In this document: positions 25,275 to 46,162 of the stretch, piece after piece | How the letters are laid out: the number at the start of each line of letters is the position of its first letter | Numbering within the stretch: the first letter of the stretch is position 1 | NCBI GenBank assembly: GCA_038087875.1 | Contig: CM075994.1 | Coordinates: forward strand, 6,386,001 to 6,450,000 | Direction: 5' to 3' | Length of the DNA: 64,000 nucleotides | Origin: Malacoraja senta | Lineage: Eukaryota | Notes under the pieces: generated by a model | The model's database searches: none | Told to the model about the DNA's origin: nothing | Seen by the model: only the letters and a program-made list of their open reading frames with translations | Translations under genes and position numbers: made by a program

Positions 25275-25568
25275 AAAGCACAGCAAATGGTTGTTGGTGG
25301 TGGTTGGTTTGAAATAAAGCACAGCAAATGGTTGTTGGGGTGGTTGGTTTGAAACAAAGCACAGAAAATGGTTGTTGGTGGTGGTTGGTTTGAAATAAAG
25401 CACAGCAAATGGTTGTTGGTGGTGGTTGGTTTGAAATAAAACACAGCAAATGGTTGTTGGTGGTGGTTGGTTTGAAATAAAGCACAGCAAATGGTTGTTG
25501 GTGGTGGTTGGTTTGAAATAAAGCACAGCAAATGGTTGGTGGTGGTGGTTGGTTTGAAATAAAGCACA
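25275..25568. repeat. 41-bp minisatellite, about 7 copies
   Basis: Unit aaagcacagcaaatggttgttggtggtggttggtttgaaat. Confidence 0.92.
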
Positions 25569-27235
25569 TGATTAAAAGTCTAAACTTGACAACTTCCTGT
25601 TTGCACTCTGTATTGATTTTAGATAAAAACGCTACCACTTACAGCTGTGATTTTTGGCCATCTTACTCAGTCCCCCTCCGCTCAATAGGTGCAGAGGATT
25701 TTTCCCGTCAATGAAAAATAAAAGTGTTATTAGTGTTTAAAATTTTTTGAGAATCTCTCTCCTGTCAATTCTGCAATGAAGGCCACGCCCCTTCCTGCGG
25801 GAGGGGGGAGGGATTATAAAACCCGGAAGTGTGCGTGTGGCTCAGTCTCTGCAAGATGGGAAGGGAGAGGTTATGACTCTGTCTGAGCTGTGAATCAACT
25901 GAACACACTGAATGTCTACTGAACTGAGTGTGATGTTTATGTGGTGTTTTGTGTGGTTTTATGGTGATTTCACCCTGCTTGAAATGGTATGAAACTGCAT
26001 CTGAATTTGGTGGCCTTGCACCCTGCATGAAATGGTATGAAACTGCATTAGAATTTGGTGGCATTGCACACTGCTTAAAATGGTATGAAACTGCACTTGA
26101 ATTTGGTGGCCTTGCACCCTGCTTGAAGTGGCAATAAACTGCACTTGAATTTGGTGGCCTTTCACCCTGCTTGAAGTGGCATGAAACTGCACTTGAATTT
26201 GGTGCCTTGCAACCTGCTTCGTGGCACGAAACTGCATTTGAATTTGGTGGCCATGCACCCTGCTTGAAGTGGCATGAAACTGCACTTGAATTTGGTGGCC
26301 TTGCACCCTGCTTGAAGTGGTATGAAACTGCACTTGAGTTTGGTGGACTTGGACCCTGCTTGAAGAGGTATGAAACTGCAATTGAATTTGGTGGACTTGA
26401 ACCCTGCTTGAAGTGGTATGAAACTGCACTTGAATTTGGTGGACTTGCACCCTGCATGAAGTGGTATGAAACTGCACTTGAATTAGGTGGCCTTGCACCC
26501 TGCTTGAGATGGTATGAAACTGCACTTGAATTAGGTGGCCTTGCACCCTGCTTGAGGTGGTATGAAACTGCACTTGAATTTGGTGGCCTTGCACCCTGCT
26601 TGAAGTGGTATGAAACTGCACTCGAATTCGTTGGCATTGCACCCTGATTCAAGTGGTATGAAACTGCACTTGAATGCAATGGCCTTGCACCCTGCTTGAA
26701 GTGGACGGAAACTGCACTTGAATTCGGTGGCCTTGCACCCTGTTTGAAGTGGTAGGAAGTGCACTTGAATTCGGTGGCCTTCCGCCCTGCTTGAAGTGAT
26801 ATGAAACTGCACTTGAATTTAGTGGCCTTGCACCCTGCTTGAAGTGGTAAGAAACTGCACTTGAATTTGGTGGCCTTGCACCCTACTTGAAATGGAAGGA
26901 AACTGCATTTGAATATGGTGGCCTTGCACCCTGCTTGAAATGGAATTTCAAGGAATAGCCATGAGTCAACTGCCAGCCCACCAGCCGTGAGTGAGCTGCC
27001 AGCACATCAGGCTTGAGTGACTGAGCTGCCACCCCAAGAATCCATTTGGCCCACAATATCCATACTAGCCCTCTGGAAACCTGTCCCTTCAGCCCACAAC
27101 ACCCATACTAGCGCTCCAGAAAGCCCCCCCCCCCACTGGCCACCAATATTTGAATTGGTGGAGAGGTGGAATATTGCGTTGGGGGACCAGCCGTCCCGTG
27201 TGAACATGGGACCGAACGGGTCCCACTTAGTCTAG
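25569..27235 (+). mobile_element. Non-autonomous Helitron-like element with an internal minisatellite
   Basis: 3' GC-rich hairpin GGGACC-GAACG-GGTCCC (27208-27224) followed 7 nt later by CTAG (27232-27235) and then T. No TIR or TSD. A second copy of the 5' part lies at 18726-19095. Confidence 0.75.
25972..26945. repeat. 48-bp minisatellite, about 20 copies, inside the Helitron-like element
   Basis: Unit gaaactgcacttgaatttggtggccttgcaccctgcttgaagtggtat. Confidence 0.95.
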
Positions 27236-27893
27236 TATATAACTAAAACTCTCATCTTGTTTGTTTGTGACTCTGCGTATGAGTGAGTGGGACCCCGGAA
27301 CAACGCCAAAATGGTACACGATAGCACTACGATTTTTGGACCACCTTACTCACAATTGTCATGTGGTGTGTTTTCAACAAGGTTCGTTCAGATTGATGTT
27401 ATATTTTACGTTAGTCGCATTTTTAACTTTACAAAATCCCAGTTTGAGAAAAAATTCTTCCATCTGCACACTGGCAGTTACAGCTATGACGTCACAATGG
27501 GACCCAAATTCTTGCTGGCCCTCCCTACAACAATGTTGCATTCACAGAACACTGAGTCCTGCCAGCAAGTTTTAAAAGTTTAAAAACAGGGAGGGGGAGG
27601 GAGTGCTGGGGGATGCAGGGGAAGTGCAATTGTATTCTTCTTTAAAGTCCTGACAGCAAGTGCAATTTGGAGGCTGAAGAGGAGGGGAGGGGGCAGTGCA
27701 GGGGCATAAGGGGAAATGAGCCGCCCCAGCGCAGTTGGGGGCTATGGATGAGTGGTGGAATATTGCTTTGGGGAACGGGTTGCGTTGGGGTAACGGGTGA
27801 GTGGTGGAATATTGCGTTGGGGGAATGGGTTGCGTTTGCGTTGGGGAACCAGGCCTCCCGTGTGACGGGGAAACAACGGATCCCACGGTCTGG
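27236..27893 (+). mobile_element. Second non-autonomous Helitron-like element, head-to-tail with the first
   Basis: Starts tatataactaaaactctcatcttg (similar to the aaaagtct.a.cttg start of the first). Shares the 3' ~70 bp (ggtggaatattgcgttgggg..cccgtgtga), with a degenerate hairpin and CTGG-T end. Confidence 0.62.
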
Positions 27894-27969
27894 TATGACA
27901 ATAAAACACTCTTGACGCACCGTGTGTCCGCACCCGTTCTCAATGGATCTCCCCGTCTGGGGGACTCAC

Positions 27970-28030
27970 TTTGTCTCCGCTTCGGCTTCACATTCAGACA
28001 CGCATAGACAATATCTTGCCCACCGAGCAC
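27970..28030 (-). CDS. Mucin-ITIM receptor gene, exon 6: cytoplasmic ITIM 2 (VLGGQDIVYACLNVKPKRRQ)
   Basis: Acceptor gtgcttgcttgtag, donor A|gtgagt. 61 nt, phase 0 to 1. IVYACL fits (I/V/L/S)xYxx(L/V). Confidence 0.72.
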
Positions 28031-28079
28031 CTACAAGCAAGCACAATTGAGACGGTGAAATACGGCTCTGTCGTGAACT

Positions 28080-28390
28080 GGCTCGCCGCTCCCGGTGGAG
28101 TTGCTGCCTCACAGTGCCAGAGACCCGGGTTCGATCCTGACAACGGGTGCTGCCTGTGCGGAGTTTGTCCGTTTCACCCTGTGACCTGCGTTGATTTTCT
28201 CCGGGTGCTCCGGTTTCCGCCCACAATCCAAAAGACGTACAGGTTTCTAAGTTGATTGGCTTCAGTACAGATTGTAACGTGTCCCTAGTGTGTGTAGGAT
28301 AGTGCTAGTGTGCGGGGATCGCTGGTCGGCGTGGACTCGGTGGGCCGAAGGGCCTGTTTTCGCGCTGTATCTCTAAAGTAAACTGAACTA
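28080..28390 (+). mobile_element. HE1/V-type SINE
   Basis: B-box GGTTCGATCC, central domain, tail gggccgaagggcctgtt..gctgtatctctaaa. Confidence 0.85.
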
Positions 28391-28464
28391 TACATGCACG
28401 CAGTAATGTTACATGGCAGCTTGGAATCTCGAGTATTGATTGGTCCCTAGATAGGAGGAGAATT

Positions 28465-28492
28465 CTGAAGAAGGGTCTCGACCCGAAACGTC
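28465..28492 (+). ncRNA. Minimal hammerhead ribozyme core (PLE pLTR)
   Basis: CTGAAGA-A-GGGTCTCGACCC-GAAA-CGTC, intact. Confidence 0.7.
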
Positions 28493-29843
28493 ACCCATTC
28501 CTTCTCTCCAGATATGCTGCCTGACTCCCTGAGTTACTCCAGCATTTCGTGTCTATCTTTGGACCCGTGACAGTTGACCCAGACGTGGATACAATGAGCT
28601 GCCAGAGGACGTGGTTGAGGCAGGTACAATAACAATATTGAAAAGGCATTAGGGCATGTGCATGGAAAGGAAATGTTTAGTTATGGGGCAAAAGTGGGTA
28701 TGTAGGAGCAGCTTAGATGGGGCCTGTCGGTTGGCGTGGACGATTTGGTCCGAGGGGAATAAATTTCTGTACTGTATGACTGTGACTCTATGGGCTTAAG
28801 GACCTGTTTCTTTGCCGCGTGATGCCATTGTAATGCAGCACCAGTATCGCGTCAACATTGGAAACATTGAATCGCTGCAATAGCGCAACACATCATTCTC
28901 CACATTCACGCTGGAGACAATGTGTTACTCCCCATCCCCCTCCCCCTCTCTCCCTTCCTCCCTCTATCACCCCGCCCCCCTCCCACTCTCCCTGTCCTCT
29001 CCCCCCCTGTCTTTCAAACCATTTCCTCAGCTCTCCACGTTGTACCACTCTTGAGATCACTCTTCGCCATGTCAGCAATAGGCCCACCAGTGCACCACAC
29101 TGCCTGAGGTCATCTGTGGCCGGTCTTGCTCTGTCCTGATCTTCTCTCGCCCCCAGCTCTGCACCCACCCCACTCCTCTCCCCCTATGCCCCATCCTCCT
29201 ACACCCTCCGCCCCCTCCCACATCCGTTCTTTCTGAAGGACACAGAAAAATAAATCTGAACAAGTGCGCCGACTCGAACGTGACCCACTCACATCCTCTA
29301 GAGATGCTGCCTGACCCACTGAGTTACAGGAGTGCTGCGTTTCTCCAGGACTTTGTATTAGAAAAGTTGCCCTGAATTAGAAGAGGATTGGGAAACTTTC
29401 ATAGGAATTAGAAGAGGCCCATCAGGAGTTAGAAGAGGCCCATCAGTTAACAATTCTCTTTCACTCACTCCCGGGCTATCGTTACCATTACTAGGTAGGA
29501 TAGACTACAACATCCATTAAGCTCTGAACTACATATTGTTGTTATTCCACTATTATTGCTTTTTGTTTTTACGTGTACCCATGTGTGTGTGTGTGTGTAT
29601 GTGTGTGTGCGAGTGTATGTGCGCGTGTGCGTGTGTTTGCGCACGTGTGTATGTGTGAGTTTGTGTATGTATACACACACTGAAATTACTTTTTCTCGTA
29701 TATTCTATTGTTTACAGTGTACTATGTTTACACATTCTGTTGTGCTACTGCAAGTAAGAATTTAATAGTTCTACCTGGGACATAAGACAATAAAACCCCC
29801 TTGACTCTTGGTCGCCAATTGTAAAAATGTTTGCTATTGGTAC

Positions 29844-29996
29844 CTTCTCCTGCTCTTCCGCAAACTGCCCGCGCGTCGATACCGGGTCTCCCAGTGAATC
29901 TTCGTGTGAATCCTCCCCGTCTCCCGAAGTCTCTCTCCGTGTCCCCGCTGGTTTCACATTTAGGCTCGCGTAGATGATAGTTTGTCCCCGGGGCAG
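29844..29996 (-). CDS. Mucin-ITIM receptor gene, exon 5: cytoplasmic ITIM 1 (LPRGQTIIYASLNVKP...AEEQEK)
   Basis: Acceptor ttctctttccttgcag, donor AAG|gtacca. 153 nt, phase 0 to 0, open. IIYASL is an ITIM. Confidence 0.72.
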
Positions 29997-30414
29997 CTGC
30001 AAGGAAAGAGAATTGAGACGGCCAAACGCCGTGTTGATATTTCAGCACCACAACAGACCTGAATTAACATTGAACAATACTCTTACAACATTACATATAT
30101 ATCACACCGCACTCCGAGCAGCAGAATTATCAACGTGGACGTTGGGATAAACAGGACAATGCAGAACAATATTTCTACCCTGAGTATTTTTTCACGGTTT
30201 CATTTAAACTTCGCACAGTATTTACATCTCAACACCATCACGGCACAGTGGCGCAGTGGCACAGCTGGTGGAGCCGCTGTCTCACATCGTCAGGGACGCA
30301 GGTGCGATTCTGACCTAGGGTGTTGTCTGCGTGTCGACTTTGTACGTTCTCCATGGCGTGTTGTGTTTTCTCCATGTGTTCTTGTTTCCTCCTACATTCC
30401 AAATGACCCTCTGT

Positions 30415-30870
30415 AGAGTATGGAAGCGGTACACATAGCTCGGTTTGCATTGATGGTGCCGAAGTAGACATGGTCGAAAACTTCAAATTCCTCGGAGTCA
30501 TTATCAACGACAACCTCTCCTGGACCACCCAGATTGCAGCAACGACCAAGAAGGCACAGCGACGCTTTACTTCCTTAGAAGACTTAGGAAGCTTGGTATG
30601 TGAACTGCAATTCACACCAACTTCTACAAATGCACCATAGAAAGCATTTTATCAGGATGCATCAAAGCCTGGTTTGGAAACAGCTCCATCCAGGACCGTA
30701 AGAAATTGCCGCGAATTGCGGACACAGCCCAGGCCATCACACAAACCAAACTCCCTTCTATTGATTCCAGCAGCATAATCAAAGACGAGTCGCACCCCGG
30801 CCATTCCCTCTTCTCCCCTCTCCCATCAGGCAAAAGGTTTAGAAGTGTGAAAACGCACACCTCCAGAATC
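30415..30870 (+). mobile_element. Rex1/Babar LINE 3' fragment
   Basis: VENFKFLGVIINDNLSWTT..KKAQRR.YFLRRL. Confidence 0.82.
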
Positions 30871-30954
30871 AGCCCCCCACCCGCCGCAACCGCGCGTTGA
30901 GGGGACGGGACCCAGAGGCTCCCACTTGGTCTATATCTCTCTAAACCTATACTA

Positions 30955-32850
30955 CCAGGTTAATTCCCAGGATGGCGGGACTAACATATAATGAAAAAAT
31001 GGGTCGACTGGGGGAGTCACTTAAATTTAGACGGATGAAAGGGGATCTTATAGAAACATATACAATTCTTAAGGGATAGGACAGGCTAGACGCAGGAAAT
31101 ATGTTCCCGGTGTTGTGGGGTCCAGAACCAAGGGTCGGTTTAAGAATAGGGTGTAGGTCATTTAGCACTGAGATGAGGAAAAATCTTTTCACCCAGAGAA
31201 TTGTGCACATGTGGAATTCTCTGCCACAGAAAGGGCAGTGGACGCCAATTCACTGGATGTTTTCAAGCTACAATTAGATATAGCTCTTCGGGCTAACGGA
31301 ATCAAGGGATAATGGGAAAAAGCAGGAATGGGGTACTGATTTTGGATGATCAGCCATGATCATATTGAATGGCGGAGCTGGCTTGAAGGACCGAATGTCC
31401 TACTTCTGCACCTATTTTCTATGTTTCAATCTATCCACTGTAAATGGATCAATTGTAATCATGTTTTGATTTTCTGCTGACTGGTTAGTACTCAACAAAA
31501 AAAGCTTTTCACTGTGCCTCGGTACACGTGACAATAAACTAAACTGAACGGAACTGAGATTGTCTCTACTGTGTAGGTTAGAACTAGCGTGAATGGATGA
31601 TCGCTGATCGGCGTGGTTTCGGTGATTGGAAGGGCCTGTTTCCTGCCATGCTGTATCTCTTAAACCTCTAGTTCGGTAAACTGAACGAGCTTAAAGAACG
31701 AACTGAAAATGACAAGTACCTCGCTGTTCGATCGTGGAATAAAGTCAAAGGACCCATCAAAGCAGCTCGAATCCGTACAGGCGCCTGAAAATGGAAATAG
31801 AAACCAAGAAAATAGGTGCAGAATTATGCCATTCGGTCCTTTAAGCCAGCGGCCATTCAATATGATCATGGCTGATCATTGAAAATCAGTACCCTGGTCC
31901 TGCTTTCTCCCCATATCCCTTGATTCCATTAGCCCCAAGAGCGATATCTAACTCTATTGAAAACATCCAGTGAATTGGATTCACAACAGTCTGGGTTTTT
32001 CCTCATCTCGATCCTAAATGCCCCACCCCTTATTCTTAAACTGTGACCTCTGGTTTTCGACTCCCCCAACATCGGGAACATTTTTCCTGCAACTAGCCTA
32101 TCCAACCCCTTAATAATGTTATTTGTTTCTATAAGATACCCTCTCATCCTTCTAAATTCCAGTGAATACTAGCCCAGTCGATCCGTTCTTTCATCATATG
32201 TCAGTCCCGCCATCCCGGGAATTAACCTGGTGAACCTACTGAGACTCTGTTGGGGTTCACTAGGGCCATGTACAACTGCAGAGGGATATTCTTGTTCCTC
32301 TGCTTCAATCCTCTCGCTATGAAGGCCAACGTGCCATTTGCTTTCTTCACTGCCTGCTATACCTGCATGCTTACTTTCAATGACTGATGTACAAGGACAC
32401 TCAAGTCTCGTTGCACTTCCCCTTTTCCTAATCTGACACCATTCAGATAATAGCCTGCCTTCTTGTTCTTGCCACCAAAGTGGATAACCTCACATTTATC
32501 CACATTATACTGCATCTGCCAATCATCTGCCCACTCACCAAACCCATCCAAGTCACAGTGCAGCCTCAAAGCATCTTCCTCGAAGCTCACCCTGCAACCC
32601 AGCTTTGTGTCATCCGCAAGCTTGGAGATGTTACATTTAAGTCCTTCGACTAAATCGATTATAATTTGTAAATAACTGGGGTCCCAGCACTGAGCCTTGC
32701 GGCACTGCCTGCCATTCTGAAAATTGACCCGTTAATTCCTACTCTTTGCACCCTGTCTACCAACCAGCTCCCTATCCATGTCAATGCCTTACCTCCAATA
32801 CCATGTGCTCTAATATTGCACACCAATCTCTTGTGTGGGATTGGAATGGA
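30955..32850. mobile_element. Degenerate CR1 3' fragments on both strands, with a Rex1 tail
   Basis: RT C-terminal remnants and ctattttctatgtttc tails: plus strand 30955-31427, minus strand 31800-32850. Confidence 0.8.
31720..31784 (-). CDS. Mucin-ITIM receptor gene, exon 4: juxtamembrane cytoplasmic (GACTDSSCFDGSFDFIPRSNSE)
   Basis: Acceptor tttctatttccattttcag, donor GAG|gtactt. 65 nt, phase 1 to 0, which bridges the TM exon to ITIM exon 5. Unique sequence between repeats. Confidence 0.58.
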
Positions 32851-34054
32851 ACTGGTATACAAGCGAACTCTTTAAAATTAACCACGCTGGACATTCATAT
32901 ATCAGGGCGGCACGGTTGCTCAGCGATAGATTTGCTTCCTTACAGCGCCAGAAACCAGGGTTCGATCCTGACTACGGGTGCTGTTTGTATGGAGTTTGTA
33001 CGTTCTTCCCGTGAGATGCGTGGGTTTTCTCCGGGTACTCCAGTTTCCTCCCACACTCCAAAGAAACTAAAGGTTTGTTGGATAATTGGCTGGGTATAAT
33101 TGTAACTTACCCCTAGTGTATGTATGGTCTGTTTCCGTGCTGTATCTCTAAACTAAATCTGTAACCGTTAGATCAATTAATCTCGGCACCATTTAAACAG
33201 CTCAAATCGAAATCAACTCGTTTATATTGTAATGAACAGGGGGTTAGGCTCAGAACAACGATTTACGATTTCAATTGCGAACATTAAATTAAGCTCAATG
33301 ATTTCAGATTATAGTGAAATAGATTAGATTGAAATCAGCCGTTTTATGTTAAAGGAAGTTAGAATGAAGTTAATGTTTCGATGTTCAAATGAAATCGGAG
33401 AAGATTATAATCAGTGGTAATTAAATAACAATTAGACGCCCCATTCGTTTTAGATGATATAATGGAAATTAGAATGAAATTTATTATTTCGTACTGCAAT
33501 TAAGCAGGGAGCAGATTTGCGAGGCAGGATGGTAGCTTACATTAAACATAAAATCCCGATAATTCAGAATGTTATATGGGACACGAGTCACACAGCATGG
33601 AAACAGGCCCTTAGGCCCAACTTGCCCACACAGATCAACATGCCCCATCTGCACTAGACCCACTTCCTGCTTTTGGCCCATATCTTCAGTCTGAAGAAGG
33701 GCCTCGACCCGAATCGTCACCCATTCCTTCTATCCAGAGGTGCTGCCTGTCCCGCTGAGTTACTCACTGATTTACTCCAATATTTCGTGTACCTCTAAAC
33801 CAATCCTATCCATGTACCTGTCTAAATGTTCAACTTTGCGATCGTACCTTTGGAGATACAGGACGAAAACAGACCCACCGAGTCCGCACCGACCAGCGAT
33901 CCCCGCACATGCGGGGTAATTTGCATTTATACCAAGCCAGTTAACCTACAAACCTGTACGTCTTCGGAGGGAGAAAACCGAAGATCACGGAGAAAACCCA
34001 CGCGTTCACGGGGAGAACGTACAAACTCCGTACAGACACCACCCGTAGTGGGGA

Positions 34055-34628
34055 TTTGTATAAGACGTTGGTGAGACCGCATTTAGAATATCGTGTTCAG
34101 TTCTGGCCACCATGTTATTCAAAATAAATTGTCAATCTAGAAAAGGTGCAGAGAAGGTTTACAAGGATGGTGCCAGGGCTAGAACTCAGGGTTGGGACTC
34201 TATTCCTTGGAGCTCAGGAGGATGAAGGGTGATTTTATTGAGGTGTATAAAATCATGAGAGGAACATATCGGGTAGATGCGCACAGTCTCTTGACCAGAG
34301 TAGGTGAATCGTGGACCAGAGGGACATAGGTTTAAGGAGAAGGGGAACAGATTTAATAGAAATCCGAGTGGTAACGTTTTCACACAAAGGGTGGTGGGAG
34401 TATGAAAAAAACGACCAGTGGTGGTAGTTGAGGCAGGGGTTATATCAACATTTAAGAAACAGTTAGACAGGTACATGGATTTGGACAGGTTTGGAGGGAT
34501 GTGGATCAAACGCAAGCAGGTAGGACTAGTGTAGATGGGGCATGTTGGTCAGTGTGGACAAGTTGGGCTGAACGGCCTGTTTCCACAATATATCACTCCA
34601 TGACTCTATAACTCTATGACTCTATGAC
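34055..34628 (+). mobile_element. CR1 (HER1-like) 3' end
   Basis: [10 protein letters not shown]; tail gggctgaacggcctgtttcc..(gactctat)n, shared with the SINE tails. Confidence 0.82.
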
Positions 34629-34805
34629 TTCTATCAAGTCTCCCCTCAAACTCCGATGTTCCAGGAAATATTCCTGAGAGAACTCAACTCACACAGTGCG
34701 CTCGCATCTGAAAAACCCGGGCAGTTACCAATCATCGAATAATCCTTTGACCGGCCCCTTGCCCGATATCTAAGGAACACCTCTGGAAGGCGCTCAGTCA
34801 CTCAC

Positions 34806-34928
34806 CGGTCCCATTTTTAACCAGGTACAGGCAGGACAACGCGGCGATCCCGAACACAAGTCCAAGCGCGGCGGCGATCAAAATGTCACTTCCAGAGAGC
34901 GAGGGGCAATTCGCTCCGCTGTCACCAT
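34806..34928 (-). CDS. Mucin-ITIM receptor gene, exon 3: transmembrane (DGDSGANCPSLSGSDILIAAALGLVFGIAALSCLYLVKNGT)
   Basis: Acceptor caactctttctgatag, donor G|gtgagt. 123 nt, phase 1 to 1. 22-residue hydrophobic helix followed by K. Confidence 0.85.
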
Positions 34929-35659
34929 CTATCAGAAAGAGTTGTTACAACACGGTTCGCCGGTAAACCTCTACATTTGGTCTGTTGACCGTTGGCCCGG
35001 GTTCATATGTGTGAAACATGCCCAGAGTATAGTGAGCGGGTGGGGGGCCCGACTGGAAAATTGTCACAGTGGCGTATCGGTAAAGTTGCTGCCTCATAGA
35101 GCCAGAACTAGTGTACCGACCAGAACTACGATCGCTGGTCGGCGTAGACTCCACACCGGGGAAGGATGCAATAGGAATCTGAGGGGTAACTTTTTCACAC
35201 AAAGGGTAATGGGTGTATGGAACAAGCTGCCGGAGGAGGTAGTTGAGGCAGGTACTATCGCAACGTTTAAGAAACGTTTAGACAGGTACATGATAAGTTA
35301 AGTTTAAAGGGTTATGGGCCGAACGCAGGCAGGTAAGACATATTGGCCGGTATGGGCAAGTTGGGCCGAAGGATCTTTCTCCACGCTGTGTGACTATGAC
35401 TCCTTGACAATCTCCTTTGAACTTTGCTCCTCTGAATGAACAGTCTAGTCTAGTCTTTGACATTTCCACCCTGAAAAAATGGTTCTGACTGTCCACCCCC
35501 TCTATGCGTATCATAATGTTGCATACTTCGATCAGGTCTGGTCGAATGTAGAGCGATGGACACGATTTAGTAGCGAGGACGGTGATTGAAGGCTACGCTT
35601 TTCCTCACGAAACCGCAGCGAGAGCATGAGACCTGCACACTTGACAGCAAGACTCACAA

Positions 35660-35820
35660 CTAAAGATTCAAAGTTAGGTTATCTACCAACAGACAGTTCG
35701 CGGACTCAGCTTAATGCAAGTCGATGACTTGGACCAAGTCACTTGGACCAAGTCACCGACTTGTATTAAGCTGAGCCCGCGGGCTGTCAGTGGATAGATG
35801 ACCTATCTTTGAATCTCTAG
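35660..35820. mobile_element. Fold-back (palindromic) MITE-like element, 161 bp
   Basis: Left arm ctaaagattcaaagttaggttatcta..gacttgg pairs imperfectly along its whole length with the right arm (revcomp ctagagattcaaagataggtcatcta..gacttgg). Confidence 0.75.
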
Positions 35821-36069
35821 CATCAGAGGTGAAATGCCTGTGAGAGTGGGCGACCTGCCGGCGCCCGCACCTCCCCCATACTCCGCCAAGGCCAGTGTCA
35901 CACGGCATCGGCCTGAATGTGAGACATCTGTTGTTTCCTCCCCAAATTTACTGCAGCCGAGCAGGCGGCCATTTGGCCCACAGGGTCGCTGCTGGCCCGT
36001 GGGGGGGGGTGGAGTGGAATCAATTAGTCGCTATGACCTCTTGTCCTAGACCCTCCCACTAGTTTCTAC

Positions 36070-36207
36070 CTGTGGATTTGGTCAGACTGCTCCATGATGT
36101 ATCGGTTATGTATGTTGTATTCATAACTGTGGTCTCCGTCGCCGTTCTTGCTCCGCTGGCTGTCTCCATTTTATCCGTCGGCGCCGATATCACCAGGACA
36201 CCAAATG
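36070..36207 (-). CDS. Mucin-ITIM receptor gene, exon 2: end of signal peptide plus Ser/Thr-rich ectodomain (TFGVLVISAPTDKMETASGARTATETTVMNTTYITDTSWSSLTKST)
   Basis: Acceptor acatttgtttag, donor G|gtagaa. 138 nt, phase 1 to 1, open. N-glycosylation sequon NTT. Confidence 0.82.
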
Positions 36208-36802
36208 CTAAACAAATGTCATGTGAAAATAAGAGGGGAAATTCAACGCCATGTTCAACTCAAGCGACTACAAACAGATTCATATTCTCTCACCAACTGG
36301 TTTATAGGTTAATTGGCTTCGGTAAAATTGTAAAATTGTCCTTAGTGTTTGTAGGATAGTGTTAATGTGTGGGGTCGCCGGATCGCCGGTCGGCGCGGAC
36401 TCGGTCGCGCTGTATCTCCAAACTAAACTAAACTAAACTAAATTATTCTCAACTCTTGTCCGCGGGAGGCAGATCCGTATTTTCACCGCTATTTGGGCAA
36501 GGGCATTTTCCTCTTCTATCTTCCATATTCTTCAAGTTCAGATGAGTAAAGTTTAAAGGAGATGTGCGGGGCATGGTTTCTATACTCATAGAATGGTGGG
36601 GCCATGGAACGCGCTGTCAGATTAGGTGGTATCGAGTTAGTGGCATTTAAGAGGCTTTTATATAGGCAAATGGATATACAGATGGCGGGGGATGGGGGGG
36701 GGGGGCATGGACCATGTACATGTAGAGGGTATTAATTTATCTTGGCATCATTTTCGGCACGGAAAGTATGGGCACAACGGCCTGCTCCTATGCTTTATTG
36801 TT

Positions 36803-37445
36803 CAGCAGACGCAGAAGGCTAGAGTAATTCAGCGGGACAGGCAGCATCTCTGGAGAGAAGGAATGGGCGACGTTTCGGATCTGAAGAAGGGTCTCGACCC
36901 GAAACATCATCCATTGCTCCTTCTCTCAGGAGATGCTGCCTGTCCCGCTGAGTTACTCCAGCATTTTGTGTCTATCGCCGAAGGACAGAAAGTGCTGGAG
37001 TAACTCAGTGGGTCAGGCATGATCCCTGGAGAAAACGGATAGGTAACGTTTCGGGTCGGGTCTCAAGAAGGGCCTCGACCCGAACCATCACCTATTCACC
37101 TTCTCCAAAGATGCTGCCTGACCCGCTGAGTTACTCCAGCATTTTGTGTCATTTTTGTGTATTAACCAGCATCTTCTTGTCTTTGTTTCCACTGTAAAAC
37201 GGAGACACAAATGACTGCAGTTGCTGGGATCCTGAGCAAGAATACAAAGTGCTAGAGGAACTCAGCGGGTCAGCCACTATCTGAGGAGGGAAATTTCTCC
37301 ATCACTTTGTTCTTTGCTTCTTCAGACAAGAAGGGAATCGACCCGAAACATCGCCCATTCCTTCTCTCCAGAGATGCTGCCTGTCCCGCTGAGTTACTCC
37401 AGCATTTTGTCTCTCTCTCTCTTCGGTGTAAGCATCTGCAGTTCC
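36803..37445. repeat. Three consecutive inverted pairs of PLE pLTR / hammerhead modules
   Basis: Minus copy then plus copy at about 36820/36881, 36991/37074 and 37231/37321. Confidence 0.8.
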
Positions 37446-38789
37446 TTCCTACACTACATTGTTCCGTGTTCTATGTTGTATGTGCGGGCAGAATCTGTGT
37501 AAAGAAAATCGGGTTTTCTAAACGTGCGATAAAACAGCAATTTTCCAAACATTTGCAATAATCGGGCAGTTTAATTTCCCTCTCGTAGTCTTAAAGGACT
37601 GGTTCCCAAAACACACGGACGACTGAAATTAAAGTGCATTTCAAGTCTTTTAAATATATAATTTAAATCATTTAAAATATTTAAGCAGAAACGCCAAACG
37701 CCTATCACACCAGGGCATAATCCTACTCTAAATGCTTACGAATCTGCAATTTGATATTGTTTTCAAATTATGTTTAATTAAGTAGTTGGTTTCTATATTA
37801 CCTTGTGAGACAGAACGATGATATTTCGGCTAAGCGGGGCTCTCACACGTTCACACTTTCTAGGAGTAGAATTAGGCCATTCGGCCCATCGAGTCCACTC
37901 CGCCATTAAATCATGGCTGACCTCTACCTCCTAATCCAATTTTCATGCCTTCTTCCCATAACCCTCGACACCTGTTGTAATCAATGTAGCCACGAACGTA
38001 GGAGATGACCTGCATCTTTAAGAGTTGGCCTCTCGACAGTGTCACAAGTGGCCCAGGGAAATAATGCTATTTAAGCCACTGTCTGAACTAGGGCCCCGAT
38101 CTGGGCAGCGGTAGAGTTGTTGCCTCGTAGCGCCAGAGACCCAGGTTTGATCCTGACTACGGGTGCTCTCTGTACGGAGTTTGTAAGTTCTACCCGTGAC
38201 CGCGTGGGTTTTCTCCGAATTTTTCGGTTTCCTCATACACTCCAAAGACGCGCAGGTTTGTAGATTAATTGGCTAGAGTTTATAAACTTGGTGTAAAAAA
38301 TATATATTGTCCTTTGTGCGTGCAGGCTTGGGTTAATGTGCAGGGATCGCTGGTCGGTGCGGACTCAGTGGGCCGAAGAGCCTGTTTCCTGTACCTCTAA
38401 ACTAAACTGAACTAAAAAAAATCTCGCACTTTGTTTTTCGTTAAATATTCCAGCATGAAGTCACAGTCATAGAATCATACAGCGTGGAAAAAGCCCAAAT
38501 TGCCCACAATGACAAGCATGCCCCATCTACATTAGTGCCACCTGCTTGCGTTTGGCCCATGGCCCTCTGAACCTATCCTATCCATGTATCTATCTAAATG
38601 TTTCTTAAACGTTGGAATTATACCTATCTCCTCCGGCAGCTCGTTCCATGCAGCTACCACACTTTGTGTTAAAAAAGTTGTCCTTCGGGTTCCTATTAAA
38701 TACCCCCCCCCCCCCCCAACGTAAACCTATATCTCACCTTCTCCCAAAATTTAAAAAAAAAACTTCCCTCCATCCGTCATGGCACTTAC

Positions 38790-38817
38790 TCAGTATTACA
38801 AGGTACACGGGAAGCAT
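38790..38817 (-). CDS. Mucin-ITIM receptor gene, exon 1 coding part: signal peptide start (MLPVYLVIL)
   Basis: AAC-ATG context, donor A|gtaagt. 28 nt, phase 1. Splicing to exon 2 yields MLPVYLVILTFGVLVISA-PTD. Confidence 0.78.
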
Positions 38818-39610
38818 GTTCTGCTGTCCAACCCCGATGCCAATTCAGGCTCACTATCCCCGGCGTCAAGCTGAGTTTATCTGGCGGGTTTCTCTCTTGA
38901 TATTCTTGTCCAGTGGCCGACAGATGTACAATATAAATAATGTTGACGTCGGAGCATGGGTGTGAATTTTAATTTAAATGGCGCGTGCCCCTTTCCCCAC
39001 CCACTTCGCATCTCCAATTAGAGATGGAACACATAGAACTGTCTCTGTTAACCTTTTCCAGCGCAGCGGTAGTTACAGCGGCAGAGACCTGGGTTCGATC
39101 CTGACCTCGGGTGCTGTCTGTGTGGAGTTTACACGTTTTCCCCGTGATTGCGTGGGTTTTCTCTGGGTGCTCCGGTTTCCCGCACTCCAACATTTCAATG
39201 ACGTACACGTTTGGAGATTTAATGACTAAGTTTAGTTTAGATATACCGCGAGGAAACAGCCCCTTCAGCTCACCGAGTTCGCACCGACCAGCGGTCCCCG
39301 CACACGAACACTATCCTACACATACTGTGGACAATTTACAATTATGCCGAAGCCAATTAACCTACGAACCTGCGCGTCTTTGGAATGTGGGAAGAAACCG
39401 AAGATCTCGGAGAAAACCCGCAGGGGGAACGTGCACACTCAGTGCAGTCAACATAGACAGTTCCTCGCGTCTCGGGTGTATTTTCAACTCGGACAGCAAC
39501 CATAGTCAGGATCGAACCCGGGTCTCTGGTGCTATGAGGCAGCAACTGTACCGCTGCGCCACGTGGCCATTCACCTTCACAGATGGTGCTTGATCACGCT
39601 GAGTTCTGAG

Positions 39611-39889
39611 GGCGGCACGGTGGCGCAGCGGTAGAGTTGCTGCCAACAGGCCAGAGACTCGGGTTCGATCCCTGACCACGGGTGCTGTCTGTATGGAGTT
39701 TGTACATTTTCCCCGTGACATGCGTGGGTTATCTCCGAGTTCTTCAGTTAACTCCCACATACATGTTTGTATAAATGGAAATTGCCCCTAGTATGTATAG
39801 GATGGTGTAAATATGCGGGGATCGCTGGTCGGTGCGGACTCGGTGGGCCGAAATGCCTGTTTCCGCGCTGCATCACTAACCTAAACTAA
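39611..39889 (+). mobile_element. HE1/V-type SINE, full length (one of more than 20 copies in the window)
   Basis: GGCGGCACGGTGGCGCAGCGG A-box, GGTTCGATCC B-box, central domain and CR1-like tail with ctaaa repeats. Others at about 32905, 33845(-), 38100, 39225(-), 48425(-), 49141, 52840(-), 55667 and 63010. Confidence 0.9.
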
Positions 39890-41701
39890 TCAGGGCAGTT
39901 TATATATTAGTGGCTTTTGTTCGACGCACCTTTATGTTGGCGAATGTCGTGACAGGTACTAACACTACTGGATAAGACGCTATTGAACGTAGATATACAT
40001 ATATATTTCTTATAAAGAATATTTTGTATATATTTCTTATTTTCTTATATATAAATATATAGTTTTTTTTATTTTTTACATTTTAAACACGGCAGATCGT
40101 CGTCCTAGAAAACTGTTCAAACTTTTATAATCATTTGCGTCCCTTAAACTTTTTAAGGGTCTGGCCACCTAATTTAATTAACACGTTGTATTTGTTAAAC
40201 GATGATTCTTTTGTAATATTGAGAGTCTGAAGCATGTAAAAGTCTAGTTTTTAAGTTTTGGATTGCTGGCACACAAAAACAATGATTAATTTTTACATCT
40301 TATTTATTAAACAACTTTTTCTGATCGCTAGAACAAAGTTATTTAAATTTAAGGGCAGCGCAGTGGTGCAGCTGGTAGAGCCGCTGCCTCACGGCATCAG
40401 AGAACGGAGTTCGATTCTGACCTCGGGTACTCTCTCTGTGGAGTTTACAAGTTAGTGGGTAGGTTTCCTCCGGGTGCTCCGGTTTCCACCTTTGTAGGTT
40501 AATTGACCCCCAGTAAATTGTCCCTACTGTGTAGGGGGTGGGTGAGGAAGTCAGAAAGCATTTGAAGGCACTGAGCCTGTACTTGCTGGAGTTTGGAAGG
40601 ATGAGGGAGGACCTCATTGAAACTTACCGAACAACGAAAGGCCTGGATAGAGTGTATGTGGAGAGGATGTTCCCACTAGTGGAAGAGTCTAGGTCCAGAG
40701 GTCGCAGCATCAGAATAAAAGTTCGTTCATTTAGAAAGAAGATGAGAAGAAATTTATTTAGTCTGAGATTGCCGTGGAGGCCGTTTTAAGGCGGAGATTG
40801 TTTGATTCTTGGTTATGGGAAGAAGGCAGGAAAATGCTGTTGAGAGAGAAATATATATAATTGCGGGGTAGACTTGATGGGCTTAATGACCTAATTCTGC
40901 TTCTAGAATGTATAGACTTATGGACTAGGGTGATCGATGGTCGACGTGGGTACGGTGGGCCGAAGGACTTTTTTTCTGTGCTGTATCAGTAAATTAAACC
41001 AAACAAAAACGTTGACCCAGTTTCTGTCTCCACTGCAGCGGTTGTGGTTATGGCTATTATTAAAACCACTTGCTGATCCTCCAAGTTCTGAATTTGAGTA
41101 TAAATTCTACAGCCACTGTAGCGAGCATTGAACTTACGCCTCCGCTTCATTGGACTATTAACTTGATCGGCACTATTCCCAGATTTCCATCAGCCTATTA
41201 AACACTACAACAACCTCCAAATAAGCTCAGAACTACATAGACATGGAACGCTAGAGACCCGTGTTCGATCCTGAATGCGGGTGCCGTCTGAAAAGAGTTT
41301 GTAAGTTCTCCCCGTGCCCTGCGTGGGTTTTCCCCGGGCGCTCCGGTTCACTCCCACATTCCAAAGACATACAGATTTGTAGGTTAATTCGCTTCGGTAA
41401 AATTGTAAATTGTCCCTCGTGTGTGTAGGATAGTGTCAGTGTGTGGGGATAGCGGTGCGGAATTGGTGGGCCGAAAGGCCTGTTTCCGCTCTGTATCTCC
41501 AAACTAAACTATTATTGTTATTATTGCATTATTATTGCTTGTTTCTATGTACATATATGCCTATCATGTGCGTATGTGCGCGTATATATTTATGAATATA
41601 GAAAAGAAGATAGACACAAAATGCTGGAACAGCGGGATAGGCAGCATATATATAGATTATTGTTGTTATTGCATTGTTATTGTTTGTTTTTATGTACATT
41701 T

Positions 41702-41948
41702 NNNNNNNNNNNNNNNNNNNNNNNNNNNNNNNNNNNNNNNNNNNNNNNNNNNNNNNNNNNNNNNNNNNNNNNNNNNNNNNNNNNNNNNNNNNNNNNNNNN
41801 NNNNNNNNNNNNNNNNNNNNNNNNNNNNNNNNNNNNNNNNNNNNNNNNNNNNNNNNNNNNNNNNNNNNNNNNNNNNNNNNNNNNNNNNNNNNNNNNNNNN
41901 NNNNNNNNNNNNNNNNNNNNNNNNNNNNNNNNNNNNNNNNNNNNNNNN
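41702..41948. other. Assembly gap
   Basis: Run of N. Confidence 1.
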
Positions 41949-42640
41949 ATATTTACATATTTTGTTGTGCTGCTGCAAGTAAGAATGTCATTGTTCTATT
42001 TGGCACATATGATAATAAACCACTCTAGACTCTTGACTTGAGATGATACTTGAGGGAGGGAAAAATGATTTGTTGTTGGTTGTTTGAAAGGAGTGGTTGG
42101 ATTCCATGAAAAGGAATCATGCATTTGAGGTCAGAAATACAGCATTTAAAAGACATTTTAATATAATGGTCCCCGGGTTGAATGGGTCAACATATGACAG
42201 CGTTTGATGGCATTGGGCCTGTACTCGCTAGTTTAAAAGGATGAGGGGGTATATCACTGAAACTTAACGGGTAGTGAAAGGCCTTGATAGAGTGGATGTG
42301 GAGAGGATGTTTTCACGAGTGGGAGAGTCTAGGATCAGAGTGCGGGTGTCAGGGGTTATGGGGAGAAGGCAGGAGAATGGGGTTGAGATGGACAGATAGA
42401 TCGGCCAAGATTGAAAGGCGGAGTAGACTGGACGGGCTGAACAGTTTAATTCTGCTCCTATGACTTATGGACATGAACTACCTTTTCTCTGCACTCTGCG
42501 GTTCTTGTCCAGCATTTCTTTGCCTCCACAAATGCTGCTCGAACTGCTGAGATCCTCTAACAGGTTATTGTTTTCTTGCTACAGATTGCAGTATCTGCAG
42601 TCTCTTGTATCTCAATAACAACCTGCTCTTCAGAGAAGAC

Positions 42641-42710
42641 ATGTACAGGAGAATTCCTGGGATTCACTCCCTCATCGGGATACTTTGGCTGCTGTTGAGC
42701 GACTCTGGAG
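42641..42710 (+). CDS. CD2/SLAM-family gene, leader exon (MYRRIPGIHSLIGILWLLLSDSG)
   Basis: 70 nt, phase 1, donor G|gtgagt. Basic n-region, hydrophobic h-region, small-residue c-region. Confidence 0.82.
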
Positions 42711-43169
42711 GTGAGTCCATGCCTTGAGCTCGGGGTGCGGGTGGCGGTAGGGTGGACGAAGGTGTGTTATAGAGAACAGTACAGCACATGAACAGGCCAT
42801 TTAGCCCACAACATCCATGCCGAACATGATGCCAAGTTAAAGTAAACTCCTCTGCCCGCACATAATCCATATCTATGCATTCCCTGTATATCAATGTGCC
42901 TTTCCAAAAGCCACATAAACCCCGCTATCGTATCTTCCGTCCACCGCCACTTCCAGCAGCGCATTCCAGACACCCACCACTCTTGGTGTAAACAAAAACT
43001 TGTGGTGCCCCAGTCCCCTCCCACATCCCGAAGACGTGCAGGTTTGTAGTTTAATTGCCCGCAGTGCGTCTGGAGTGGGTGCGAAAGTGGAATAATATAG
43101 AAGTTGTGTGATCGGGTGATCCATGGTTGACATGAGCTCTGAGTAATGAGTACCCTTTTTCCATGCTCG

Positions 43170-43217
<48 letters not shown>

Positions 43218-43296
43218 GGTCTGTCTGTCTGGTCTGCCTGGTCTGTCTGGTCTGTCTGTCTGTCCTGTCTGTCTGTCCTGTCTGTCTGTCCTGTCC

Positions 43297-43368
<72 letters not shown>
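43170..43368. repeat. (TGTC)n microsatellite
   Basis: Direct reading. Confidence 0.98.
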
Positions 43369-43371
<3 letters not shown>

Positions 43372-43404
43372 ATTTATCCATCCACCTACCCAGGGACTAT
43401 AAAT

Positions 43405-44010
43405 GCCTGTGAGTGTACCAGGACAGTAAACTGGACTGGTCCAGGAACACTAAGGCCTTGCATAAGAAGGGGGAGAACCGTCTGCTCCGCAACTTCAACG
43501 TCCGCAGTGAGATGCAGCAAATGTTCTACCAACCGGTGGTAGCCAGTGCCATCTTCGTTGCTGCTGTGTGCTGTGGCAGCGGGGCGAAGGCTGCGGACTG
43601 CAACAGGATCAACAAACTCATCAGGAAGGCTGGCCCCATTCTGGGGGTGGAGTTGGATTCATGGGAGGTGGTCTTGGAGGGGATGATGCTTCGCAAACTG
43701 CGGAGCATCCTGGACAATACAGCTCACCCACCCATGACACACTGGTCAACCTGAGTAGTACCTTCAGTAACAGACTGCTTCCACCAAGATGCAGGACAGA
43801 ACGCCACAGGAGACCCTTCTTCCCTGTGGCTATCGAACTTTACAACTCCTCCCCCCTCTAATGGGGTAGACTGAGACTGAGACTGACCCACCCCCATCCT
43901 CATTCTGTGCACATTCCCAAAGCCATACCACTCTCACTTTATTTTCATGTTTCATGTTTCATGTTTTTTTTATGACTGTTGGCAAATTAATTTCCTTCCT
44001 GCGTAAATAA
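43405..44010 (+). mobile_element. Rex1/Babar LINE 3' fragment
   Basis: DSKLDWSRNT..MFYQPVVASAIF.AAVC.GS, followed by 3' UTR. Confidence 0.8.
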
Positions 44011-44338
44011 AGTTCTAGTGTATCGGATCGGATCTATCGAAACGCGTTACAATGTACCTCTGTACATGTGACAATAAACTAAACTAAACTATCTATCTTC
44101 TAATCTATCTAAATAATCTATCTATACAATCTATCAATATATCTAATCTATCTAATATATCAATCTAATCTATCTAGTTTATCTATCTATTTAATTTATC
44201 AATCTAATCTATCCATCCAGACTGGGTTCAATAACAACCTCCAGAAATGTCTGTGTGGAATTTACAAATTCTCCCTCTGACTGACCCTTGCAAACTTCAA
44301 ATTGAATATGTGACGTGATGCCATATTCTGAATATGTG

Positions 44339-44997: not shown

Positions 44998-45199
44998 ATG
45001 CCATATTCTGAATATGTGGAAGGAAAACGGCGCACCCGGAGAAAACCCACGCGGTCACGGGGCGAACGCAGAAAATCCGTACAGACAGCAGCCGTTGTCA
45101 GGATCAAACCCGGGTCTCTGTCGCTGCAAGGCAACAAGTCTACCGCTGCTGTTTTAAATACTGTGGGGGTTTTTTGTTAATCTGCTTTTCTTGAAACAG

Positions 45200-46137: not shown

Positions 46138-46162
46138 GACAGTTTGCTTTTCATTGAAACAG

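What the first reader, a model, noticed from the sequence alone, without database searches (positions are those of the whole stretch)
27970..38817. Ig-less mucin-type receptor with two ITIMs: a gene hidden from the ORF track
Seen: six minus-strand exons with GT-AG sites and fully concordant phases (38817-38790, 36207-36070, 34928-34806, 31784-31720, 29996-29844, 28030-27970). They splice to MLPVYLVILTFGVLVISA-PTDKMETASGARTATETTVMNTTYITDTSWSSLTKSTDGDSGANCPSLSGSD-ILIAAALGLVFGIAALSCLYLV-KNGTGACTDSSCFDGSFDFIPRSNSELPRGQTIIYASLNVKP...EEQEKVLGGQDIVYACLNVKPKRRQ. The signal peptide runs straight into a ~50-residue Ser/Thr-rich ectodomain with one N-glycan site and one Cys. Established: tandem ITIMs recruit SHP-1/SHP-2, and most ITIM receptors have Ig or lectin domains. 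Inference: an inhibitory sialomucin or transmembrane adaptor (reminiscent of SIT1-type adaptors) that I cannot assign to a known family. The terminal exon was not identified.
Basis: partly seen in the sequence, partly recalled or inferred. Interest (0 to 1): 0.78.

Follow-up and report, generated by a model that had tools for sequence, protein, structure and literature searches.

The report
Skate Ig-less two-ITIM membrane gene model
A skate genome holds an intact-looking six-exon gene model for a small membrane protein with no antibody-like domain and two "off-switch" tyrosine motifs, resembling the mammalian adaptors LST1 and SIT, but I found no RNA, no annotated relative and no 3' end, so it is not yet shown to be a working gene.

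Summary
The six minus-strand exons sit at the stated coordinates, all with AG/GT sites and matching phases. They splice into 189 codons: leader, 52-residue Ser/Thr-rich ectodomain (one NTT sequon, one Cys), uncharged 22-residue TM helix, and a 97-residue tail with two canonical ITIMs (IIYASL, IVYACL).

It is more than chance. The exons are single-copy islands in repeat-filled introns. The TM is the only non-repetitive hydrophobic helix in the region. Exon 6 is an old duplicate of exon 5, with synonymous sites near saturation but the ITIM peptide preserved (pS 0.64 vs pN 0.20, p=0.008).

No Ig exon or Ig relic lies within the gene span. The tail is unrelated to those of the neighbouring SLAM/CD2-like genes.

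Function is unproven:
- All sequencing runs found were DNA.
- Exon 5 has no homologue among 1.84 billion protein representatives, which include skate RNA assemblies.
- No orthologue turned up in six fetched SLAM-like loci of four batoid species.
- The exon-1 homologue in Leucoraja erinacea has a 10-nt gap that breaks the phase.
- Exons 4-5 show dN/dS of about 2 (not significant) against a related species.
- The last exon is missing.

Best reading (about 45%): a lineage-restricted, LST1/SIT-like inhibitory adaptor. Main rival: a recently inactivated or incomplete relic. The scan had already noted the SLAM-like neighbours, but not this gene.

The parts
38790..38817 (-). Exon 1: ATG plus 9 codons of a hydrophobic leader (MLPVYLVIL), ending in phase 1, donor TGA|GTAAGT
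   Evidence: A at -3 of the ATG. The homologous stretch in L. erinacea locus L001 lacks 10 nt, leaving an 18-nt, phase-0 exon.
36070..36207 (-). Exon 2: the rest of the leader (TFGVLVISA) plus the Ser/Thr-rich ectodomain with one NTT sequon; phase 1-1
   Evidence: Unique in the window. No Pfam family.
34806..34928 (-). Exon 3: membrane-proximal stalk with the single ectodomain Cys, the TM helix, and KNGTG; phase 1-1
34819..34884 (-). Uncharged 22-residue TM helix (residues 71-92), Asp before it and Lys after it
   Evidence: It is the only non-repetitive hydrophobic helix in the gene region.
31720..31784 (-). Exon 4: juxtamembrane cytoplasmic segment with two Cys; phase 1 to 0
   Evidence: The acceptor is at the 99th percentile. 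Three amino-acid changes and no stop in organism D.
29844..29996 (-). Exon 5: first ITIM plus an acidic linker; phase 0-0
   Evidence: In organism D the ORF, both splice sites and the ITIM are kept (IIYASV), with 10 nonsynonymous and 1 synonymous change.
29961..29978 (-). ITIM 1, IIYASL (Y127)
27970..28030 (-). Exon 6: second ITIM; an old duplicate of the 5' part of exon 5; ends in phase 1 at donor AAA|GTGAGT, with no stop codon
   Evidence: pS 0.64 vs pN 0.20 over 16 codons, p=0.008.
27995..28012 (-). ITIM 2, IVYACL (Y178)
30011..30021 (-). 11-nt block CCGTCTCAATT, 15-25 nt upstream of the exon 5 acceptor (candidate branch-point region)
   Evidence: An identical block lies upstream of exon 6. 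Organism D has one change inside it, at 30014.
28045..28055 (-). The same 11-nt block, 15-25 nt upstream of the exon 6 acceptor

Best explanation
This is a lineage-restricted skate gene for a small type I membrane protein without any Ig or lectin domain, working as an inhibitory transmembrane adaptor.

Shown by the sequence: a leader; a 52-residue Ser/Thr-rich ectodomain with one N-glycan sequon and one membrane-proximal Cys; an uncharged TM helix; cysteines at and just after the cytoplasmic end of the helix; and a 97-residue tail whose only two tyrosines sit in canonical ITIMs, 51 residues apart, each on its own phase-0 exon.

Inferred from established ITIM biology and from LST1 and SIT: the ectodomain is O-glycosylated. 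The Cys may make a disulfide-linked homodimer. The juxtamembrane cysteines may be palmitoylated. Src-family kinases phosphorylate the two ITIMs, which then recruit SHP-1/SHP-2 (or SHIP or Csk) to the membrane and damp nearby activating receptors.

The phase-1 leader, stalk and TM exons suggest descent from an IgSF receptor gene that lost its Ig exons.
For: - The exon structure, phases and translation are confirmed, and the splice sites are strong.
- The exons are unique, single-copy islands between high-copy repeats (depth table).
- The TM helix is genuine-looking and correctly placed.
- Exon 6 duplicates exon 5 together with 25 nt of upstream intron. Synonymous sites are near saturation while the ITIM peptide is kept: codons 1-16 give pS 0.64 vs pN 0.20, Fisher p=0.008; the ITIM core gives pS 0.84 vs pN 0.09. 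This means long-term purifying selection on both copies.
- There is no stop or frameshift in 189 codons, and all 11 splice sites are intact.
- In a relative about 6% diverged, exon 5 keeps its ORF, both splice sites and an ITIM-compatible motif.
- No Ig-like ORF or relic lies in the introns.
- The gene lies head-to-head, about 3.9 kb from the leader of an immune SLAM/CD2-like gene.
- The architecture parallels LST1 (PMC8111073) and SIT (PMC2193021).
Against: - There is no RNA evidence. The runs labelled RNA behaved as DNA, and no RNA run holds exon 5.
- Exon 5 finds no homologue among 1.84e9 protein representatives. That collection does contain skate RNA-assembly proteins: L002 is a Logan RNA contig of the neighbouring gene type.
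- There is no annotated gene in the L. erinacea flank that holds the exon-1 homologue. That homologue has a 10-nt gap giving phase 0, incompatible with exon 2.
- Exons 2-6 were not found in six SLAM-like loci of L. erinacea, A. radiata, R. longicauda and P. pectinata.
- Between species, exons 4-5 show 13 nonsynonymous and 2 synonymous differences (dN/dS about 2, not significant), so no purifying selection is visible outside the ITIM.
- The model has no stop codon, and everything just downstream is high-copy repeat or satellite.
- Pro at +1 of the predicted leader cleavage site is unfavourable.
Confidence: 0.45

Rival explanations
1. It is a relic: the leader, stalk, TM and tail of a former IgSF inhibitory receptor that lost its Ig exons and is now silent or recently pseudogenised. 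The exons look intact only because inactivation is recent, or because it lies in the missing 3' end or the promoter.
For: - No transcript-derived or annotated protein exists anywhere.
- There is no terminal exon or stop. Repeats and a 48-bp satellite lie directly downstream.
- Read-through beyond exon 6 is homologous to exon 5 but in a shifted frame.
- dN/dS between species is not below 1.
- The exon-1 homologue in L. erinacea is out of phase.
- The phase-1 exon layout is typical of IgSF genes that normally carry Ig exons.
Against: - All six exons and all 11 splice sites are undamaged.
- Both ITIM copies show old purifying selection.
- ORF, splice sites and ITIM are kept in a relative.
- No decayed Ig exon is detectable by tblastn with the neighbour's C2 domain.
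Confidence: 0.3
2. It is a real gene, but the model is wrong or incomplete in a way that changes the reading. Possibilities: further coding exons, a different first exon, translation starting at the Met inside exon 2 (giving a leaderless type III adaptor like LST1 or LAT), or an Ig-bearing isoform that uses exons outside the span.
For: - The 3' end is missing.
- The exon 1 phase is not conserved in L001.
- An in-frame Met lies four residues after the predicted leader.
- The donors of exons 2, 4 and 5 are only moderate.
- N gaps at 41702-41948 and downstream at 22291-22660 and 19209-19639 cannot be read.
Against: - No Ig-like ORF lies on the minus strand anywhere from 20 to 42 kb.
- The next Ig exons are on the opposite strand and belong to a separate gene, as shown by the RNA contig L002.
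- Exon 1 has a good Kozak context and a perfect donor in the right phase.
Confidence: 0.15
3. It is a chance assembly: short ORFs stitched together by a reader who could choose among many AG/GT sites.
For: - The exons are short (28-153 nt).
- Selection bias in picking splice sites cannot be excluded.
- There is no external support.
Against: - The exon 5/exon 6 duplication has a synonymous-biased divergence pattern.
- The TM helix is unique and sits in the right place and order.
- Two acceptors and two donors score at the 99th percentile or above.
- A hydrophobic ATG exon has a consensus donor in the required phase.
- The order leader, ectodomain, TM, basic anchor, ITIM, ITIM is coherent.
Confidence: 0.05

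Closest known systems
LST1/A (leukocyte-specific transcript 1), mammalian transmembrane adaptor
   Same: A small Ig-less single-pass protein with an extracellular dimerisation Cys, cysteine next to the cytoplasmic end of the TM, and a tail with two ITIMs that bind SHP-1 and SHP-2 (PMC8111073). Its ITIMs are also of the YASL / YAC type; this last point is from my own recollection of the human sequence and was not tested here.
   Different: LST1 is 97 aa, has no leader and only a very short ectodomain, and lies in the MHC class III region. The skate model has a leader, a 52-residue Ser/Thr-rich ectodomain and a SLAM-like neighbour. No sequence similarity was detected.
SIT / SIT1 (SHP2-interacting transmembrane adaptor)
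   Same: Leader peptide, short glycosylated ectodomain with one N-glycan sequon and one Cys, disulfide-linked homodimer, about 20-aa TM, long tyrosine-motif tail with an ITIM that recruits SHP2; 196 aa in all (PMC2193021). It is the only non-Ig, non-lectin entry I recognise in a list of 52 known ITIM receptors (PMC11460946, Table 1).
   Different: In SIT the ectodomain is 18 aa, the sequon includes the Cys, and there are five tyrosine motifs with only one ITIM. The skate model has 52 aa, a separate sequon and Cys, and exactly two tyrosines in the tail, both ITIMs. No sequence similarity was detected.
SLAM/CD2-family receptors (the genomic neighbours)
   Same: The same genomic neighbourhood; a phase-1 leader, stalk and TM exon layout; immune signalling through tyrosine motifs.
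   Different: There are no V or C2 domains. The tail shows no similarity to 28 batoid and shark SLAM-like proteins, whose tails carry TIYDEI and VLYAVI switch motifs rather than I-x-Y-A-x-L-N-V-K-P.
IgSF ITIM receptors such as LAIR1, PILRA, KIR and LILRB
   Same: Two ITIMs of the (I/V)xYAxL type on separate cytoplasmic exons, and a split leader with a phase-1 junction.
   Different: Those receptors bind ligand through Ig domains. Here none is encoded within the gene span.

Membership tests
ITIM-bearing inhibitory membrane proteins (functional class) | A cytoplasmic (I/V/L/S)-x-Y-x-x-(I/V/L) motif downstream of a TM helix | tested here: met
   IIYASL at Y127 and IVYACL at Y178, both after the TM at residues 71-92.
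ITIM-bearing inhibitory membrane proteins (functional class) | Tyrosine phosphorylation and recruitment of SHP-1, SHP-2 or SHIP | not testable with these tools
   Needs a phosphopeptide pull-down or co-immunoprecipitation.
SIT1 | Sequence homology to SIT | tested here: not met
   Pfam scan of the exon 2, 3, 5 and 6 pieces found no family. phmmer of exon 5 against 1.84e9 representatives returned only two spurious bacterial repeat proteins. The full-length spliced protein could not be searched because it has no reference.
SIT1 | Leader plus short ectodomain with one N-glycan sequon and one Cys, and a long tail with an ITIM | tested here: inconclusive
   The same elements are present. But the ectodomain is 52 aa rather than 18, the sequon does not include the Cys, and the set of tyrosine motifs differs (PMC2193021).
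LST1 | Two ITIMs, an extracellular dimerisation Cys, and a juxtamembrane palmitoylation Cys | tested here: met
   Two ITIMs; Cys 8 residues before the TM; Cys at the TM end and 6 and 11 residues after it. Dimerisation and palmitoylation themselves were not tested.
LST1 | Sequence homology, no leader, very short ectodomain, MHC class III location | tested here: not met
   No Pfam or phmmer hit. A leader and a 52-aa ectodomain are present. The only identified neighbour is a SLAM/CD2-like gene, and no MHC class III gene was seen in the window.
SLAM/CD2 family | An N-terminal V-type and a membrane-proximal C2-type Ig domain | tested here: not met
   No Ig-like ORF on the minus strand between 20 and 42 kb. 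tblastn with the neighbour's C2 domain found nothing in the introns.
SLAM/CD2 family | A tail with TxYxx(V/I) switch motifs homologous to other members | tested here: not met
   blastp and phmmer of the model against 28 SLAM-like proteins gave nothing below E=0.07. Their tails carry TIYDEI and VLYAVI.
Mucin-type (sialomucin) membrane proteins | A Ser/Thr-rich, densely O-glycosylated ectodomain | tested here: inconclusive
   21 of 52 ectodomain residues are Ser or Thr. There are no tandem repeats, few Pro, and glycosylation cannot be tested here.

The most novel reading that the evidence does not exclude
The gene is a working, skate-specific Ig-less inhibitory adaptor that arose from an IgSF receptor by loss of its Ig exons. 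It serves as the signalling partner, or a cis-acting brake, for the tail-less SLAM/CD2-like receptors encoded head-to-head next to it. Recognition and inhibition would then be split over two neighbouring, possibly co-regulated genes.
Probability: 0.08. Interest if true: 0.65.

Novelty: new member of a known kind. Interest (0 to 1): 0.36.

Why it matters
If it is expressed, this would be an Ig-less ITIM adaptor in a cartilaginous fish with no detectable sequence relationship to LST1 or SIT. That would suggest that 'ligand-blind' inhibitory adaptors arose repeatedly, here probably from an IgSF receptor that lost its Ig exons.

It sits beside a cluster of SLAM/CD2-like genes that an earlier agent's note (s1-140212) describes as tail-less. 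This raises a testable idea of division of labour between recognition and inhibition.

It is also an example of a small-exon immune gene that annotation pipelines miss. If it is a relic, it is an ordinary by-product of turnover in an immune receptor cluster.

Tried and rejected
**RNA evidence**
- Two run searches were made. The 'RNA?' runs held only repeat words and behaved as DNA when laid.
- No RNA run held exon 5, so the junctions could not be tested.

**Homology**
- The exon-6 ORF gave no candidates.
- Exon 5 by phmmer gave only two bacterial repeat proteins, rejected as spurious.
- Pfam found nothing on the exon pieces.
- The full-length spliced protein was not searched because it has no reference and must not be typed.

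**Ig exon**
- Pattern scans of all stop-to-stop ORFs found none.
- tblastn with the neighbour's C2 domain found none on the minus strand or in the introns.

**Synteny**
- Six SLAM-like loci were fetched (L001, L003-L007).
- Only L001 (L. erinacea) is collinear with the window, and it reaches only as far as exon 1. The rest of the gene would lie beyond the 10-kb flank.
- All 12 look-ups are spent.

**Other readings rejected**
- SLAM-derived tail: rejected.
- ITAM adaptor of the FcR-gamma or CD3-zeta type: rejected. The tyrosines are 51 residues apart and the TM has no Asp.
- Read-through of the exon 6 donor as the true C-terminus: unlikely. The 132 extra codons run into high-copy repeat, and the stretch homologous to exon 5 is in another frame.

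**Terminal exon**
- 29 candidate acceptors were listed, and none is convincing. The nearest strong one, at 27673, would add 10 codons.

**Earlier notes of this scan**
- Nothing like this gene was found by words or by sequence.


Full report
**1. The observation**

- Exons 2-6 are each preceded by AG, and all six are followed by GT.
- The lengths (28, 138, 123, 65, 153, 61 nt) give phases 1,1,1,0,0, and the last exon ends in phase 1.
- The joined sequence is 568 nt, or 189 codons with no stop.
- No assembly gap lies inside the gene span.

The protein has these parts:
- an 18-residue hydrophobic leader;
- a 52-residue ectodomain with 21 Ser/Thr, one NTT sequon and one Cys eight residues before the membrane;
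- a 22-residue uncharged TM helix (residues 71-92), with Asp before it and Lys after it;
- a 97-residue tail whose only two tyrosines lie in IIYASL (Y127) and IVYACL (Y178).

**2. Is it more than chance?**

Several independent features say yes.
- All 11 splice sites score at or above the 80th percentile of GT/AG dinucleotides on that strand. The exon 4 and 5 acceptors and the exon 3 and 6 donors reach the 99th percentile. The PWM is a rough one of my own, used only for ranking.
- The exon-3 helix is the only plausible TM helix in the gene region. Of the 22 hydrophobic 21-mers found in six frames of the window, the others are mostly low-complexity or repeat-derived.
- Each exon is unique in the window. 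When DNA contigs of four runs were laid on 26950-32949, the exons sat in low-depth, single-copy islands, and the introns reached depths of 10^5 to 10^7, that is, transposon copies.
- Exon 6 is a duplicate of the first third of exon 5. The similarity starts 25 nt upstream of both acceptors, with an identical 11-mer CCGTCTCAATT that may be a branch-point region. It runs through the ITIM and continues about 20 nt past the exon 6 donor.
- Over the 16 ungapped codons the two copies differ at 8.0 of 12.5 synonymous sites but at only 7.0 of 35.5 nonsynonymous sites (Fisher p=0.008). In the ten ITIM-core codons the figures are 6.0 of 7.2 against 2.0 of 22.8. The duplication is therefore old, and the peptide I-(I/V)-Y-A-(S/C)-L-N-V-K-P was kept by selection in both copies. 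The region was chosen after seeing it and the counts are small, but this is the strongest internal evidence that these are, or long were, coding exons.

**3. Is it really Ig-less?**

- Every minus-strand stop-to-stop ORF of 55 residues or more between 20 and 42 kb was listed. None looks like an Ig domain; those that met the loose Cys-spacing pattern look like transposon or satellite fragments.
- A tblastn with the neighbour's C2 domain finds its own exon and two paralogous exons on the plus strand (47896-48240, 46150-46509, 45187-45312). It finds nothing in the introns of this gene.
- The second half of the leader is fused to the Ser/Thr-rich exon, so an Ig exon between exons 1 and 2 would break the leader.
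- Within the limits of sequence inspection, the gene encodes no Ig or lectin domain.

**4. Surroundings**

- The plus strand from about 42.6 to 51.7 kb carries a SLAM/CD2-like gene with serial V-C2 cassettes.
- Its best database relatives are named 'signaling lymphocytic activation molecule-like', from Leucoraja erinacea (91-94% identity), Amblyraja radiata and Rhinoraja longicauda. The window therefore comes from a skate.
- A Logan RNA contig (L002) of a close homologue aligns to the V, C2, TM and last exons at 46888-47310, 47908-48201, 50375-50485 and 51437-51676.
- The two genes are head-to-head, about 3.9 kb apart.
- The model shows no similarity to 28 SLAM-like proteins. Their tails carry TIYDEI and VLYAVI motifs.

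**5. Evidence about function**

The evidence here is weak or negative.
- Expression: the runs that ranked as 'RNA?' held only repeat words and behaved as DNA. No RNA run holds exon 5.
- Homologues: exon 5 searched by phmmer against 1.84 billion representatives gave only two bacterial repeat proteins. The exon-6 ORF gave no candidates. The underlying collection does contain skate RNA-assembly proteins (L002) and annotated skate proteomes. The gene therefore appears to be neither annotated nor assembled from RNA in what was indexed.
- Synteny: of six fetched SLAM-like loci, only L001 (L. erinacea scaffold JAMYXN010000212.1) is collinear with the window (38525-52000), and its flank stops just past exon 1.
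  - The exon-1 homologue there reads ATGCCTCCCATGTACCTT|GTAAGT. It is 10 nt shorter than in the window, which gives an 18-nt, phase-0 exon incompatible with exon 2.
  - No gene is annotated in that flank.
  - I cannot tell whether L001 is an orthologue or a paralogue.
  - The loci from A. radiata, R. longicauda and Pristis show no trace of exons 2-6. They may not be the cluster-edge copies.
- Relatives' DNA: in organism D, about 6% diverged, the contigs over exons 4 and 5 carry 15 listed substitutions, of which 13 are nonsynonymous. There is no stop, both exon 5 splice sites are unchanged, and the ITIM reads IIYASV, still within the consensus. dN/dS is about 2 and not significant, so apart from the ITIM core no constraint is visible. 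The difference table is truncated. I judged it complete for these single-copy stretches, but that is an assumption.
- A second haplotype in organism C, which also has contigs identical to the window, carries V-to-A and G-to-R changes in exon 5 and P-to-R in exon 4.

**6. The 3' end**

- Exon 6 ends in phase 1 at a strong donor.
- Read-through would add 132 codons of repeat-derived sequence. The part still homologous to exon 5 is in another frame.
- Downstream lie high-copy repeats, a 48-bp satellite (25971-26943), a 41-bp repeat and two N gaps.
- Twenty-nine candidate acceptors were listed, and none stands out.

**7. Reading**

- The most likely explanation (0.45) is a lineage-restricted gene for an Ig-less, possibly dimeric and glycosylated, two-ITIM adaptor.
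- It would work like mammalian LST1/A, which has two ITIMs, a dimerisation Cys and a palmitoylation site and binds SHP-1 and SHP-2 (PMC8111073). It would also resemble SIT, which has a leader, an 18-aa glycosylated ectodomain with a Cys, and an ITIM that binds SHP2 (PMC2193021).
- It is not a member of either family. No sequence similarity was found, and the defining details differ.
- Its phase-1 leader, stalk and TM exons and its location suggest an origin from an IgSF receptor gene that lost its Ig exons.
- The rivals are a recently silenced relic (0.30), a real gene with a different or larger structure (0.15) and chance (0.05).

**8. Novelty**

- Ig-less ITIM adaptors are a known, small kind. 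SIT1 is the only non-Ig, non-lectin entry I recognise among 52 known ITIM receptors in PMC11460946.
- If real, this would be a new and apparently unrelated member in a cartilaginous fish.
- Without RNA, an orthologue or a 3' end, the interest is moderate.
- Earlier notes of this scan covered the neighbouring SLAM-like genes, but not this gene.

Noticed in passing
window 42575-51676 (+): A SLAM/CD2-like gene with serial V-C2 cassettes. V exons lie near 45.5-45.8 and 46.9-47.3 kb. C2 exons lie at 45187-45312 (partial), 46150-46509 and 47896-48240. By alignment with RNA contig L002 of a close homologue, the TM exon is at 50375-50485 and the short last exon at 51437-51676. It is 91-94% identical to an L. 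erinacea 'SLAM-like' protein.
   Followed up: partly
window 38790-38817 versus L001 1192-1213: There is a 10-nt difference (GTAATACTGA is present in the window and absent in L. erinacea) exactly at the end of exon 1. It changes the exon from 18 nt (phase 0) to 28 nt (phase 1). Which state is ancestral is unknown.
   Followed up: partly
window 25971-26943 and 25275-25568: A 48-bp satellite of 20 copies (89% matches) and a 41-bp repeat of 7 copies (96% matches) lie directly downstream of the gene. The satellite reads as a long open frame in several phases but is not coding.
   Followed up: no
window 28093-28359: A tRNA-like SINE (start GGGCGGCAC(A/G)GTGGCGCAG, poly-A end) sits in intron 5, only 62 nt from the exon 6 acceptor. 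Contig depth there reaches 10^6 to 10^7 in all four DNA runs.
   Followed up: no
window 29740-30225 and 31540-31878: DNA runs of organism C contain contigs identical to the window and also contigs about 3% different over the same single-copy stretches. This is either a very divergent second haplotype or a close paralogue of this gene.
   Followed up: no
window 7858-8610 (+) and 32360-32731 (-): Reverse-transcriptase fragments of a LINE (motif FADDTKLGG). The second lies in intron 3 of the gene model.
   Followed up: no
L005 4328-27138 and L007 (Rhinoraja longicauda): The upstream region equivalent to window 39.6-44.3 kb is repeated with each SLAM-like gene copy. The tandem duplication unit therefore starts about 0.8 kb beyond exon 1 of the ITIM gene and does not include it.
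   Followed up: partly
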